Source: Magallana gigas
Lineage: Eukaryota
Reading direction: 5' to 3'
NCBI RefSeq assembly: GCF_963853765.1
Contig: NC_088854.1
Location: forward strand, 8,432,001 to 8,496,000
DNA length: 64,000 nucleotides
This document shows, piece after piece, positions 32,680 through 49,044 of the stretch (position 1 is its first letter; each line of letters opens with the position of its first letter). The notes under the pieces are model-generated. The model searched no databases, was not told where the DNA came from, and was given only the letters and a program-made list of their open reading frames with translations. The position numbers and the translations under genes were made by a program.

Positions 32680-35600
32680 TCAAATTTTGGTGTTTTCTCT
32701 TTCTTCTTTAAGTTTTTCCTTTCTCTCTTCTTGCTTAGCTTGTGAGTATTTCTTAATAATGTTATATGGAAGTAGCTCTGGGTTTAGGATTTTGAATGGA
32801 ACGTCTGTCTTTTCCTCTTCCTCTGTTTTGTTCAGCAAGGATCTGTAATATTCCATATCGTAACCTCTAAAGGTCAGAGGCCCTTCCATGAACCCTAGGA
32901 AGAAACAGTTTCAAAATTATTTGCAATTAACTTCTTTTAAAAGTTAACATTAAAGCACCATTGATGCATAATATGGACAAGTTTTTTTAGTCTTTCCTAT
33001 CTGGCACTGTTTGAAGGTGTAGCTTATTATAACATTGAACACTAGGAATAAACCATTCTGTTCATGTGGATTTAGTAAAATTTGTCATTTTAAGGGTATG
33101 TAATTAAGAGACCATGGTTAACCAATAAAAACTTATGTTATTCTGTTTCACTGAGTGAAATTTGGAGCTCAATCTAGATTAATAAGATCACAATGGTCAG
33201 AGATTGACCAAATTAACCTTGAATATTGCATCAAATCACAGTTTACCAACATGTTAATATTTCTGGTGTACATTTATAGAATCAAAATGATCCATTCCTA
33301 GTTTGATCATGTCACATATTACACATTTTAAATGTACATGTACATGTTTTGATGGATATTACTAGTCCTATCAAAATTCACTCCGTTATATTTCCTCAAT
33401 GTCAAACTTTTCACTTTCTCACTTAAAATAAATTTTGGGAGATTTGTCACAACAGATTTCGTAATTGAAAAATTGAGAAAGTCCAAAATAAAATTGATCG
33501 CAACAGACTGGGTAATAAGATAGTTGAGACGAAAAATTCTTATCCACATTAACACCAAAAGTGTCCACAACATGATAAATAACAGCACAACTGCTCATCT
33601 TGCATACTAACCTTCCTCAATTGCCCTTTCTGTCGCTCGAACCAGGTTTCTCTGCTGTTTATTACAAACTCCAGTTTTCATGTTGTCAGCTACATGAACT
33701 GTGTTGGTATCTAGGAACTGCTTTAGAAGCTCAATGTGCTGTAAGCAGAAATGGGTACATGCACTTATAGAAATGTTAAATTTTTATCAAGTACACTTTT
33801 ATTATCAATTGCTCTGTTGCCCTATTCCGCGTTTTAACCTTTACATATGATTTGTGCAATTTCATGGACCACAACACTTTGCATAAAAAGCAGGAGTAAT
33901 TTCAAAATATTTGTACATATGCTACTACAATTTACTTTTAAAATATGAATAAACAAAATGAAGATATATGATTACCCTGTGGTCCACAACAAAGTAGATA
34001 TCTCGGCATACTGGACAAGGGTTGTTGGTCAAGAAAACTCCTTTATGCTGCAAGAAATGAATGTCAAAAAAGTTTGATATCAATATAAAAGATGATGAAG
34101 AAAAACGAAAATAAAATTCTGGAACTCTCAGCAATCAAATAATCCAAATTTGTAAGAGATGTCATGGTTCGATCCCTGTAATAACCTGAACTTTGATCCA
34201 AGTTGTTCTTTATGGTTTTGGTTCTGTTCTTCTGGGTTGCTATTCGAGGTGACTTCATTAACTTTTATAACATTTACAAAACAAAACACATCTGGGACAT
34301 TTACTTGGTAGATGGGTAGTTATAAAGTTGATATAGTGGAGGTATTAAAAATTGAAAAAAATCAGCCTTTCCTTTTTTACATCACTTAAGGTGGTATGGG
34401 ACACCTCCTTACTGTGACGTACTTTCGATCGAAATAAACAATAAAATCAAGCATAATTTGATAAACTTCTTATTTCCGGAAATTATCATCGAACATCGTA
34501 GCATTTTTATTAATTTTAATCTTTTCAAAATTTTTCTTAACATTTTTTTGGGTAAAATTTTGCAAACTTTGAAAATTCTAAATCAGTTTAAGTATTTTGA
34601 TTATAATGTACTTTAATCCACATTAATACTGGCAGGTGTCCCATACCACCTCTTGAAGAACTGAGCCATATATTTAAATTTATGCTGTTTCTCATTGTCT
34701 TACATCAAATTAAAGATATCCAAATCACATCATATATAATTTTATGTCAATTAACAAGCATTTTTTTTTTGGTTCGTTGGTCAGTCATATTTAAAAACCT
34801 ATGTTGTCGAGAGGAGATGGGGAAGTGCTTGTTTTGGAAAAGACTTGCTACATGCCATCACCCAGGGTCAGAATAATTCTACCTTATTGTTCATGAAATG
34901 TCGTACTCATTACAGCCCCGAGTGTCTAGTCATTTGATAAATACATGCATCTATACACATGTTCTACTATTTGAATCTATTTTTGACAAAAGTAGATTTT
35001 TTTATCTTCATTATTTTCAATAAATGTTCTATGCAGTATTGTAGGGGCGTGATATTTACTTTAAATGTTTGCAGTATTCTAGCCATTTGTAGGGGTATGA
35101 TACTTACTTTACAAGAATAGCGGGGCTTTGGCATGATGTTTCCTCTGTAGTTCCTCCTGTATCTCATCCAAACTTTGTCTGTGCCATAAGCTTTCCTGTA
35201 TGCTATAAGAAAAATGAGAAACAAATAAATCCCTTTATTGGTTCTTGCATTCTGAAGATGAGGCCAGCAGAGAGACAGAAAGGTGAAAAAACAGTTTTCA
35301 CATGCCTGCACTAGAGAAATACTCCATGCTCTGCTCTAGCGTGACATTAGGTGTTTTCTTCCTCTTATATTCAATTCCTCCATAGACACTTGGCAATTCA
35401 TCTGATTTCTTTTCATCTTCTTCATCTTGCCTCCATTTTAGTCTCATAGATCTATTGCATGATACCCCTAGCTACAAATAAAACACTTCATTACACCAAG
35501 GCTGACAGTGCAATATATACAATAAAATATGTTCAAATCCAGTGACAAACTAAATCTATTCAGCAAATGTCTTGTACTCTATGGATGATAATGTGGTTAT

Positions 35601-47900: not shown

Positions 47901-49044
47901 GAAAAACCAACAGTACCTGTGTCCACTGGTGCGGGTGCACCCCCTGACCCAAACTCCCTGTTTGGTCAGCTCAATCTACCTCCAGATTTGGCCAATGTAC
48001 TTCATTCATTCCAACAGGGAGGGACTCTCCCACCCAATCTTGACCAAGGCAGTGCCCAGAATATACTGGCCTCCATGATGGTGAGTAGACATTCTAATCT
48101 TGTGCCATGAAAATTTTTTATTTATTGATCAGTTTTATAATTATAGATACATTGTATGAAAATTTTTTCTTTGTCACTTACAGGGAACTGTTGGGGATCC
48201 AACCACTGGGGATGCTTTTGAGAAACTGAAACAAATTCTTGAGCCCTTCCAGTCCATGCAAAACCATGGAGGTATTCATTCATTATCTTTTAGTTAACTC
48301 TCTAAGTCGTATATAATTAAGTTAGAATGTATAATTCATATGATAGACAGGTTCTAATCAACCCTCTTTGTTTTGCAGTGATGGGACCTATGCATCCTCC
48401 AGGCCCAATGAGAATGATGGGACCACCTCCAGGGGGGATTTTAGGAGTAGCTCCCCCAGGATTCAACCCAATGATGGGACCAGGAGGCCAGAGATTTCCA
48501 GGTGTGTAAAATTATCCATTACAGTCCTCTGTTTTAGAAACTCTATGTTGAAAATTGTCACTGTTTGGGATGACTATGTTTACATTTTATTGTTGGTATT
48601 GTAGGTGGCCCTGGTGGTGATGAATGGGGAGAGAACATGATTGGAGGACCACACATGAGGGGCAGAGGAAGGGCAGGGATCCCTATGAGAGGTGGAGGTT
48701 TACGAGGTCCACCTCCTGGAGTACCAGGAGGTCCTCCAATGGGACCTCCAATGAGAGGAGGAAGAGGAGGCAGAATTAGACAAGGTCAGTATTGCTGATA
48801 TTTTATGAATACAACAGATTAGTTAGTTATGTAACTATTTTAATGTGCAAATTTGTTTAATAAGTATGTTAAGTATTTCTTTAACTGATGGTATAATAAT
48901 GAATCATAATTTTAATATTTATTTTCTTTTCAACTTTCAGTGACGGGCGATCGAGCCGTATGTCGACATTTTGCAGCAGGGGGCTGTAGGAGAGGAAATA
49001 CGTGTTCATTTCTACATCCTGGTGTTAACGGTCCCCCCGTGTAG
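41917..49044 (+). CDS. PPP1R10: PP1 regulatory subunit 10 (PNUTS). The ATG is the last codon of exon ~41803-41919, followed by exons 43913-44097, 44208-44392, 44529-44603, 44712-45023, 45136-45214, 45342-45508, 45934-46169, 46297-46466, 46619-46789, 46909-46973, 47200-47253, 47365-47492, 47672-47747, 47868-48080, 48184-48271, 48379-48501, 48605-48784, 48941-49044
   Basis: N-terminus [12 protein letters not shown]...[18 protein letters not shown]...[15 protein letters not shown] (TFIIS-N-like), PP1-binding KKVSWAED...[24 protein letters not shown], a Gly/Pro/Arg-rich tail, and a C-terminal CCCH finger [27 protein letters not shown]. The start exon is the least certain part. Confidence 0.95.

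What the first reader, a model, noticed from the sequence alone, without database searches (positions are those of the whole stretch)
32680..49044. MRPS18B and PPP1R10 are head-to-head in a mollusc, as in the human MHC class I region
Seen: MRPS18B (-) and PPP1R10 (+) diverge from a shared ~1-4 kb interval. Established: human PPP1R10 and MRPS18B are adjacent and divergently transcribed at 6p21.33. Inference: this bidirectional gene pair has been kept since the protostome-deuterostome split, implying a constrained shared promoter that links a nuclear PP1/transcription-termination factor to a mitoribosomal protein. A perfect CRE (38539) and a YY1-like motif (~39274) are candidate elements.
Basis: partly seen in the sequence, partly recalled or inferred. 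Interest (0 to 1): 0.7.

Follow-up and report, generated by a model that had tools for sequence, protein, structure and literature searches.

The report
Ancient MRPS18B–PPP1R10 head-to-head gene pair
In this oyster the genes for a mitochondrial ribosomal protein (MRPS18B) and a nuclear phosphatase-targeting protein (PPP1R10/PNUTS) point away from each other, with the PNUTS transcript starting about 0.5 kb from the MRPS18B start codon, as in humans; the same arrangement occurs in a sponge, a sea anemone, a brachiopod and a limpet, so it is a very old animal gene pair of a kind already known by the hundreds.

Summary

- **MRPS18B (minus strand):** six coding exons, 38040 down to 32680, 241 codons. 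It is the B paralogue. The genome has exactly three S18 loci, and the other two match MRPS18A and MRPS18C.
- **PPP1R10/PNUTS (plus strand):** 20 exons, mapped with an RNA-seq contig. Non-coding exon 1 is 38594-38913, exon 2 ends in the ATG (41917-41919), and the stop is at 49042-49044.
- **Interval:** the MRPS18B ATG and the 5' end of the PNUTS transcript are 553 bp apart. Nothing lies between them.
- **Candidate elements:** the CRE (38539-38546) sits about 50 bp upstream of the PNUTS transcript end and is conserved in Saccostrea. The YY1-like motif lies in PNUTS intron 1 and is not conserved.
- **Synteny:** the same head-to-head pair occurs in Saccostrea, Lottia, Lingula, Nematostella and the sponge Corticium, and in human according to the literature. 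It is lost in Capitella and Tetranychus. Ptychodera, Lytechinus and Owenia are unresolved.

The pair therefore predates Bilateria. A truly shared promoter is plausible but not shown, because about 380 bp between the two promoter-proximal islands is unalignable between oyster genera. The class (conserved 5'-5' microsyntenic pairs) is known. This pair was not named in the literature searched, and the scan had not noted it before.

The parts
37984..38040 (-). MRPS18B coding exon 1 (ATG at 38040-38038; 19 codons, then donor GTAAGT)
   Evidence: ORF/donor scan. The peptide is 79% identical to the annotated start of the Saccostrea MRPS18B CDS at L004 6403-6347.
35312..35471 (-). MRPS18B exon 2
   Evidence: Acceptor and donor read from the sequence; phase fits exons 1 and 3.
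35108..35202 (-). MRPS18B exon 3, carrying the B-specific motif VWMRYRRNYRG
   Evidence: All 7 PDB hits are S18b/mS40 chains, residues ~63-94. It is conserved in L004, Lottia and Lingula.
33976..34047 (-). MRPS18B exon 4 (NPCPVCRD motif)
   Evidence: The top 7 PDB hits are all S18b, residues ~97-123. Splice sites read.
33612..33738 (-). MRPS18B exon 5 (S18 domain core)
   Evidence: Pfam PF01084 at 1.5e-7. This is one of only three S18 loci in the genome. Best PDB hit is S18b 114-161.
32680..32894 (-). MRPS18B exon 6 with stop codon (32682-32680)
   Evidence: Splice site and frame. 72% identical to the Saccostrea counterpart.
38041..38593 (.). Interval between the MRPS18B start codon and the 5' end of the PNUTS transcript (553 bp). 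It holds both promoters.
   Evidence: The MRPS18B-proximal ~60-90 bp is conserved with Saccostrea. 38126-38507 is unalignable.
38539..38546 (.). Perfect palindromic CRE TGACGTCA, about 50 bp upstream of the PNUTS transcript contig end and 499 bp from the MRPS18B ATG
   Evidence: It is conserved in Saccostrea at the same distance (487 bp) from the MRPS18B ATG. Full CREs are enriched in the inter-CDS interval of the spiralians checked. Human parallel in PMC2774331.
38508..38959 (.). Block conserved between Crassostrea and Saccostrea: the PNUTS promoter plus non-coding exon 1
   Evidence: blastn 78% identity over 469 bp. Sub-blocks: 79% around the CRE and 93% for 38775-38913.
38594..38913 (+). 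PNUTS exon 1 (non-coding; the 5' end is a minimum), followed by donor GTAAGT at 38914
   Evidence: RNA-seq contig L014 nt 1-320 maps here at 98.4% and splices to 41804.
41804..41919 (+). PNUTS exon 2: 5'UTR ending exactly in the start codon (ATG 41917-41919, then GTAATT)
   Evidence: L014 nt 321-436, with the CDS starting at L014 nt 434. The block, with its acceptor and donor, is conserved in Saccostrea.
43913..49044 (+). PNUTS coding exons 3-20: TFIIS-N/TND domain, PP1-binding KVSW region at ~46.7 kb, Gly/Arg-rich tail, CCCH finger. Stop at 49042-49044. The last exon (from 48939) carries the 3'UTR on to at least 49685, outside these coordinates.
39275..39288 (+). YY1-like AAAATATGGCCGCC. It lies inside PNUTS intron 1 and is probably not a promoter element.
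   Evidence: Sequence. Intron 1 is 38914-41803. There is no alignment with Saccostrea between 38960 and 41783.

Best explanation
These are the oyster orthologues of MRPS18B (mitoribosomal mS40) and PPP1R10/PNUTS, transcribed divergently from closely apposed promoters. The PNUTS transcript starts at or just upstream of 38594. The MRPS18B start codon is at 38040, and its TSS is inferred at about 38.06-38.13 kb.

The head-to-head arrangement is ancestral to animals. It was inherited from before the sponge/cnidarian/bilaterian splits, kept in molluscs, brachiopods and vertebrates, and lost in some lineages.

It most likely persists because the two housekeeping promoters occupy one compact interval of about 0.5 kb, with a CRE beside the PNUTS start. 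Almost any breakpoint between the genes would then damage one promoter or separate it from shared elements. That is the 'coregulated 5'-5' pair' class of conserved microsynteny.

Shown: gene identities, exon structures, the PNUTS 5' exons, the adjacency in six genomes, and conservation of the CRE between oyster genera.

Inferred: the MRPS18B TSS, any use of the CRE by both genes, and selection as the cause of retention.
For: - **MRPS18B identity:** PDB hits to S18b for three collinear exons, exclusively so for the two N-terminal ones. The genome has three S18 loci, and the other two are best matched by mL66/S18a and bS18m/S18c.
- **PNUTS identity:**. Named orthologues map collinearly.
- **Transcript contig L014:** 20 exons, with a 433-nt 5'UTR split over 38594-38913 and 41804-41916.
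- **MRPS18B exon 1:** matches the annotated CDS start in Saccostrea.
- **Pair (- then +) with no gene called between:** Saccostrea, Lottia, Lingula, Nematostella and Corticium.
- **B-specific motifs in those neighbours:**. PDB hits only to S18b for the Nematostella exon (6.8e-5) and the Corticium exon (0.02).
- **Human pair:** bidirectional promoter with CREB-bound CRE sites (PMC2774331).
- **CRE:** conserved between oyster genera. Full CREs number 5 against 0.17 expected in the inter-CDS intervals of independent lineages.
- **Class:** described by Irimia et al. 2012.
Against: - The MRPS18B TSS is therefore unmapped and co-expression is untested.
- About 380 bp between the MRPS18B-proximal island and the CRE/PNUTS island (38126-38507) does not align between Crassostrea and Saccostrea. 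This fits two separate promoters better than one shared element.
- No full CRE is present in the Nematostella or Corticium intervals.
- One CRE each also occurs in the 10 kb upstream of PNUTS in three species that show no MRPS18B there, so the CRE may simply be a PNUTS promoter feature.
- The pair is broken in Capitella and Tetranychus, so it is not indispensable.
- It was not seen within 10 kb in Ptychodera, Lytechinus or Owenia.
Confidence: 0.8

Rival explanations
1. The pair is ancestral, but it is retained passively. The two promoters are independent, and the pair survives mainly because the neutral target for a breakpoint between them is only a few hundred bases. Shared regulation is not under selection.
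For: The ~380-bp spacer between the two conserved islands is free to diverge between oyster genera. The pair has been lost without obvious consequence in Capitella and Tetranychus. The two proteins have no known functional relation. A CRE also occurs upstream of PNUTS in species without the pair.
Against: Spacer length is kept between oyster genera: 499 vs 487 bp from the MRPS18B ATG to the CRE. In the human pair one CRE-containing interval gives opposite, CRTC/TORC1-dependent responses in the two directions, which argues for interaction. Irimia et al. found 5'-5' conserved pairs to be co-expressed above background.
Confidence: 0.3
2. The adjacency arose independently (by convergence) in molluscs and vertebrates.
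For: The pair is absent or unseen in several intermediate lineages: Capitella, Tetranychus, Ptychodera, Lytechinus and Owenia.
Against: The same two orthologues, in the same head-to-head orientation, occur in a sponge, a cnidarian, a brachiopod, a gastropod and two oysters. Chance adjacency of two given genes is roughly 1 in 10^4 per genome, so repeated independent origin is not credible. Three of the 'absences' are only absences within a 10-kb flank of large genes.
Confidence: 0.02
3. The minus-strand gene is MRPS18A or MRPS18C rather than B, so the parallel with the human locus is false.
For: The S18-core exon alone scores almost equally against S18b, S18c and bacterial S18.
Against: The N-terminal exons hit S18b chains exclusively or as all seven top hits. 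The genome has two other S18 loci that match S18a (3.6e-10) and S18c (1.9e-8) best. The 241-codon length fits B (258 aa in human chains) and not A (196) or C (142).
Confidence: 0.02
4. The pairing reflects a direct functional coupling that must be co-regulated, such as nuclear PP1/Pol II termination control with mitochondrial translation capacity, or MRPS18B's reported extra-mitochondrial roles.
For: Very deep conservation. The human promoter behaves as a directional CREB/TORC1 switch.
Against: No data here bear on function. Most conserved 5'-5' pairs involve unrelated housekeeping genes. Losses in two lineages argue against an obligatory coupling.
Confidence: 0.08

Closest known systems
Human PPP1R10/MRPS18B bidirectional promoter at 6p21.33 (Hartzell et al. 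2009, PMC2774331)
   Same: The same two orthologues, divergently transcribed, with a full CRE in the interval between them. In human, CREB binds there, and TORC1 activates the MRPS18B direction while repressing the PPP1R10 direction.
   Different: In the oyster the CRE is next to the PNUTS transcript start and about 0.5 kb from the MRPS18B ATG. PNUTS has two 5'UTR introns, so the start codons are 3.9 kb apart. The flanking genes are hamartin/TSC1, a radial-spoke-head gene and a rhodopsin-type GPCR, not MHC class I framework genes. No binding or reporter data exist for the oyster.
Conserved ancestral microsyntenic pairs (CAMPs) of the coregulated 5'-5' type, e.g. HSPE1-HSPD1 (Irimia et al. 2012, PMC3514665)
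   Same: Unrelated or housekeeping genes kept head-to-head with a short intergenic distance across more than 600 My, from sponges or cnidarians to vertebrates, with repeated lineage-specific losses.
   Different: MRPS18B-PPP1R10 is not named in the main text of that paper, and its supplementary tables were not available. Whether it is already on their list is unknown. Unlike HSPE1/HSPD1, the two products do not work together.
Genomic regulatory blocks (GRBs; bystander gene carrying enhancers of a developmental regulator)
   Same: Microsynteny kept by cis-regulatory constraint.
   Different: Neither gene is a developmental transcription factor. The constraint suggested here is promoter proximity, not enhancers inside a neighbour's introns. 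One conserved intronic block (43562-43678) exists, but its role is unknown.

Membership tests
MRPS18B / mS40 (mitoribosomal S18 paralogue B) | Ribosomal S18 domain (PF01084) | tested here: met
   Exon 5: 31.8 bits against a cut-off of 21. Also found by a whole-genome family scan.
MRPS18B / mS40 (mitoribosomal S18 paralogue B) | B-specific N-terminal extension (VW..YRRN.KG and NPCP.CRD segments) absent from A, C and bacterial S18 | tested here: met
   For exon 3 all seven PDB hits are S18b/mS40 chains. For exon 4 the top seven of nine are S18b. The matched residues, ~63-94 and ~97-123, are collinear. Single-exon E-values are weak (0.02-0.1).
MRPS18B / mS40 (mitoribosomal S18 paralogue B) | Distinct from the MRPS18A and MRPS18C genes of the same genome | tested here: met
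   There are three S18 loci in G000. L001 is best matched by mL66/S18a (3.6e-10) and L002 by bS18m/S18c (1.9e-8).
MRPS18B / mS40 (mitoribosomal S18 paralogue B) | Full-length orthology by tree or reciprocal best hit | not tested
   The spliced protein has no single reference.
MRPS18B / mS40 (mitoribosomal S18 paralogue B) | Mitochondrial targeting and incorporation into the small mitoribosomal subunit | not testable with these tools
   The N-terminus (exons 1-2) is basic and hydroxylated, which is consistent with a presequence, but this was not evaluated.
PPP1R10 / PNUTS | N-terminal TFIIS-N (TND) domain of the PNUTS type | tested here: met
   Exons 3 and 4 match PNUTS TND structures 6VTI, 6ZV2, 7LQT and 9CI7 at 6.6e-13 and 3.6e-14. 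The next best hits (Elongin A, TCEA1) are at 0.3 or worse.
PPP1R10 / PNUTS | PP1-binding RVxF-type motif with the following FELDETER segment | tested here: met
   [24 protein letters not shown] aligns to the PNUTS peptide of 4MOY (1.8e-5) and to PP1-targeting peptides derived from it. Binding itself was not tested.
PPP1R10 / PNUTS | C-terminal CCCH zinc finger after a Gly/Arg-rich region | tested here: met
   zf-CCCH_4 at 7.9e-8 and zf-CCCH at 2.4e-7 in the last exon. The Gly/Arg-rich frames lie at 48.3-48.8 kb.
PPP1R10 / PNUTS | Collinear full-length similarity to named orthologues | tested here: met
   The Saccostrea protein (P0002) and the 871-aa product of an RNA-seq contig (P0192) map exon by exon. 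Homologues are named PPP1R10 from sponge to mammal.
Conserved 5'-5' microsyntenic pair with bidirectional promoter (Irimia et al. 2012; Adachi & Lieber criterion <1 kb) | Divergent (head-to-head) orientation with no gene between | tested here: met
Conserved 5'-5' microsyntenic pair with bidirectional promoter (Irimia et al. 2012; Adachi & Lieber criterion <1 kb) | Transcription starts less than 1 kb apart | tested here: inconclusive
   The PNUTS transcript reaches 38594 and the MRPS18B ATG is at 38040, so the gap is at most 553 bp if MRPS18B has no upstream non-coding exon. The MRPS18B TSS is only inferred from ~60-90 bp of conservation. Read evidence was unavailable.
Conserved 5'-5' microsyntenic pair with bidirectional promoter (Irimia et al. 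2012; Adachi & Lieber criterion <1 kb) | Linkage and orientation conserved across distant phyla | tested here: met
   Porifera, Cnidaria, Brachiopoda and Mollusca (three genera). Vertebrata from the literature.
Conserved 5'-5' microsyntenic pair with bidirectional promoter (Irimia et al. 2012; Adachi & Lieber criterion <1 kb) | Co-expression or shared functional cis-elements | not testable with these tools
   Only indirect evidence: the CRE is conserved between oyster genera and enriched in spiralian intervals, and there are human reporter data.

The most novel reading that the evidence does not exclude
The MRPS18B-PNUTS unit is a pan-metazoan regulatory module dating from the sponge-human ancestor or earlier. 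Its compact divergent promoter works as a CREB/CRTC-dependent directional switch that trades off mitochondrial-translation capacity against nuclear PP1/Pol II-termination control. Selection on that switch, rather than mere small target size, has kept the genes together for more than 600 My.
Probability: 0.12. Interest if true: 0.6.

Novelty: new member of a known kind. Interest (0 to 1): 0.42.

Why it matters
This is a clean, well-anchored example of a gene pair kept head-to-head from sponges to humans. It shows that part of the 'framework' of the human MHC class I region is an ancient housekeeping unit that predates the MHC, and in the oyster it sits among unrelated genes. Experimental data on directional CREB/TORC1 control already exist for the human promoter. 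The oyster, Lingula, Nematostella and Corticium loci therefore give a ready comparative series for testing whether deep microsynteny of 5'-5' pairs reflects real sharing of promoter elements or only the small size of the breakable interval. It does not define a new kind of system, since hundreds of such pairs have been catalogued.

Tried and rejected
1. **Read evidence.** Later local BLAST runs used the window only as a local database, or used stretches from 37000 upwards.

2. **First guess at the PNUTS start.** I first placed it at ATG 39311|GTTAGG, or at a 22-residue extension from ATG 39279 (after). Both are wrong. The transcript contig and conservation with Saccostrea place the ATG at 41917-41919 and exon 1 at 38594-38913.

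3. **TATA-like motifs at 38808 and 38862** as PNUTS core promoter: rejected, because they lie inside exon 1.

4. **MRPS18B exon beside the CRE on the minus strand:** only short ORFs ending in stops. The splice-acceptor-like CTTCAG at ~38100 is not conserved in Saccostrea. It remains possible that MRPS18B has an upstream non-coding exon.

7. **Literature and look-ups.** The supplementary tables of Irimia et al. are not held. Anneissia PNUTS is not on record. No amphioxus PNUTS appeared in the lists.

8. **Other motifs.** NRF1, ETS/GABP, Sp1 and YY1 consensus motifs showed no consistent presence across the intervals.
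Full report
**What is there**

The window is eukaryotic, about 35% G+C, with no N runs. That agrees with the closest named PNUTS proteins, which come from Saccostrea cucullata and Crassostrea virginica.

**MRPS18B gene model (minus strand)**

I read six coding exons with canonical GT-AG sites and consistent phases. They total 723 coding nt, or 241 codons:
- 38040-37984
- 35471-35312
- 35202-35108
- 34047-33976
- 33738-33612
- 32894-32680

**PPP1R10/PNUTS gene model (plus strand)**

The coding exons run from 43913 to the stop at 49042-49044.

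**Identity of the minus-strand gene**

- Exon 5 carries the S18 domain (PF01084).
- Taken alone, that exon does not separate paralogues. It scores alike against S18b, S18c and bacterial S18.
- The two exons before it do separate them. For exon 3 every PDB match is a chain of mitoribosomal S18b/mS40, and for exon 4 the seven best matches are. The matched residues, about 63-94 and 97-123, are collinear with the 114-161 match of exon 5.
- A family scan of the whole assembly finds exactly three S18 loci. The locus at C2:11.77 Mb is best matched by mL66/MRPS18A (3.6e-10). The locus on C8 is best matched by bS18m/MRPS18C (1.9e-8). The window locus is the third.
All tests were run exon by exon, and no full-length tree was built.

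**Identity of the plus-strand gene**

- Exons 3 and 4 match the solved TFIIS-N (TND) domain of PNUTS at 6.6e-13 and 3.6e-14. Other TND proteins score 0.3 or worse.
- The exon at ~46.7 kb matches the PP1-binding peptide of PNUTS (4MOY), with KVSW in the place of the RVxF motif.
- The last exon is a CCCH finger.
- Because exon-sized queries cannot retrieve full-length proteins with the word search, I spent the one exhaustive search on exon 4.
- It returned PNUTS proteins named from sponges to mammals.
- The Saccostrea protein maps collinearly on the window.

**Where the genes start**

The Saccostrea locus (L004) has an annotated MRPS18B CDS start. It is 79% identical in peptide to my candidate exon 1 and has the same donor position. 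This fixes the MRPS18B ATG at 38040.

For PNUTS, homologues begin MAPIDP, so the first coding exon contributes only the ATG. My first guess, ATG 39311, was wrong.

A word search with the Saccostrea protein returned an 871-aa product (P0192) from a Logan RNA-seq assembly. It is essentially identical to the window's exons. Its 3,689-nt contig (L014) has a 433-nt 5'UTR and maps as 20 exons:
- Exon 1 is 38594-38913, followed by donor GTAAGT.
- Exon 2 is 41804-41919 and ends in the ATG.
- Then come exon 3, starting at 43913, and the following exons.
- The last exon reaches at least 49685.

The two start codons are therefore 3.9 kb apart, but the PNUTS transcript begins no more than 553 bp from the MRPS18B ATG.

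Upstream of that ATG, about 60-90 bp is still alignable with Saccostrea. From this I infer a short 5'UTR and a TSS near 38.06-38.13 kb. That TSS is not shown.

In 37.9-44.0 kb there is no Rfam family and no tRNA, and none of the eight larger ORFs I scanned there has a Pfam hit.

**The interval itself**

Crassostrea and Saccostrea align in two islands:
- the MRPS18B exon 1 with its proximal upstream bases
- a block at 38508-38959

The second block starts with the perfect CRE (38539-38546; 79% identity around it). It continues through PNUTS exon 1, whose last 140 nt are 93% identical. That is more than the neighbouring coding exons show (85-90%).

The CRE lies about 50 bp upstream of the transcript contig's end. 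It is 499 bp from the MRPS18B ATG, against 487 bp in Saccostrea.

The ~380 bp between the islands does not align at all.

The YY1-like motif at 39275-39288 lies in PNUTS intron 1, in sequence that has no counterpart in Saccostrea. I do not regard it as a promoter element.

A single CRE in one genome is not remarkable (2 in the window against 0.51 expected). Across intervals the picture is different:
- Full CREs also occur in the inter-CDS intervals of Saccostrea (2), Lottia (3) and Lingula (1, 277 bp from the MRPS18B ATG).
- Counting independent lineages, that is 5 observed against 0.17 expected under a first-order Markov background.
- None occurs in the Nematostella or Corticium intervals.
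- One each occurs in the 10 kb upstream of PNUTS in three species that lack the pair there.

The CRE may therefore be primarily a PNUTS promoter feature.

In human, CREB binds full CRE sites in the PPP1R10/MRPS18B bidirectional promoter. TORC1 activates the MRPS18B direction while repressing the PPP1R10 direction (PMC2774331).

**How old the pair is**

I looked up the genomic context of PNUTS orthologues with 10-kb flanks.

| Species | Upstream of PNUTS |
|---|---|
| Saccostrea cucullata (oyster) | S18 gene, minus strand, 242 aa |
| Lottia gigantea (gastropod) | S18 gene, minus strand, at the flank edge |
| Lingula anatina (brachiopod) | S18 gene, minus strand, 264 aa |
| Nematostella vectensis (cnidarian) | S18 gene, minus strand, 261 aa |
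| Corticium candelabrum (sponge) | S18 gene, minus strand, CDS starts 962 bp apart |
| Capitella (annelid) | Tudor gene on the same strand, no S18 sequence |
| Tetranychus (spider mite) | SRCR gene on the same strand, no S18 sequence |
| Ptychodera, Lytechinus, Owenia | no gene and no S18 sequence within 10 kb |

In the five species with the pair, the S18 gene is the immediate upstream neighbour on the minus strand, and no gene is called between the two.

All five neighbours carry the B-specific motifs. The Nematostella and Corticium exons hit only S18b chains in PDB (6.8e-5 and 0.02).

The pair is broken in Capitella and Tetranychus.

Ptychodera, Lytechinus and Owenia remain unresolved. Their PNUTS genes span 23-34 kb, and in the oyster the PNUTS TSS already lies 3.3 kb upstream of the ATG.

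With sponge and cnidarian outgroups, the parsimonious reading is one ancestral head-to-head pair with several losses. Convergence is not credible.

The wider neighbourhood is not conserved with the human MHC class I region. The window's other genes are hamartin/TSC1, a radial-spoke-head gene and a rhodopsin-type GPCR.

**How it probably works, and what is not shown**

The two promoters lie within about half a kilobase of each other. The human data show that such an interval can behave as one regulated unit. Irimia et al. (2012) described nearly 600 conserved pairs, enriched for 5'-5' orientation, short intergenic distance and co-expression.

The simplest account is that breakpoints between these genes are rarely tolerated, because they would cut through one promoter or detach it from shared elements.

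The freely diverging spacer between the two oyster islands, and the losses in two lineages, caution against calling the promoter truly shared. Passive retention through small target size is a serious rival (I give it about 0.3). I see no need for a functional link between PP1 biology and the mitoribosome.

**Novelty**

Searches of about 8.4 million full texts found the human bidirectional promoter paper and MHC maps. None noted that this pair is conserved outside vertebrates. Zebrafish has both genes on chromosome 19.

The pair may still be in the supplementary lists of microsynteny surveys, which I could not read.

I class it as a new member of a known kind, of moderate interest.

Noticed in passing
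window 38805-38855 (+), within PNUTS exon 1: A 16-codon upstream ORF (MYKLWNIIIPQILFDH) sits in the most conserved part of the PNUTS 5'UTR (38775-38913, 93% identical to Saccostrea, more than nearby coding exons). Saccostrea keeps a near-identical uORF one codon longer. The 433-nt 5'UTR holds several further uATGs, including one overlapping the main ATG.
   Followed up: partly
window 41917-41921; L004 10001; L010 10001; L011 10001: The PNUTS start codon is the last three bases of an exon (ATG|GT). The same intron directly after the ATG is implied by the annotated models of Saccostrea, Nematostella and Corticium, so the intron position may be very old.
   Followed up: partly
window 43562-43678: A 117-bp block in PNUTS intron 2, about 240-350 bp upstream of exon 3, is 82% identical to Saccostrea (L004 12427-12544), while the rest of the intron is unalignable. 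It could be an alternative exon or an intronic regulatory element.
   Followed up: no
window 47365-47493: This 129-nt PNUTS exon is present in the oyster RNA-seq contig and in the scallop protein, but missing from the annotated Saccostrea protein P0002. It is either an alternative exon or an annotation skip.
   Followed up: no
window ~16000-27650 (+), 9938-10679 (-), 52119-53186 (-): Neighbouring genes are hamartin/TSC1 (Pfam Hamartin in two exons), a radial-spoke-head protein gene, and an intronless rhodopsin-type GPCR. A 7tm_1 gene also follows PNUTS in Saccostrea (L004 26776-27828). None is a human MHC class I framework gene.
   Followed up: partly
window 35775-35888 and 36606-36764 (MRPS18B intron 1): Two stretches of the intron give near-identical translated frames, so a repeated (probably transposon-derived) element occurs at least twice in this intron. 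The read tool's filter tripped at 36180-36220, between them. I did not examine those places.
   Followed up: no
window 39548-39589: A perfect (TC)21 microsatellite in PNUTS intron 1.
   Followed up: no
window 9030-9037: The only other perfect CRE (TGACGTCA) in the 64-kb window lies just below the radial-spoke-head exons found at 9938-10679.
   Followed up: no
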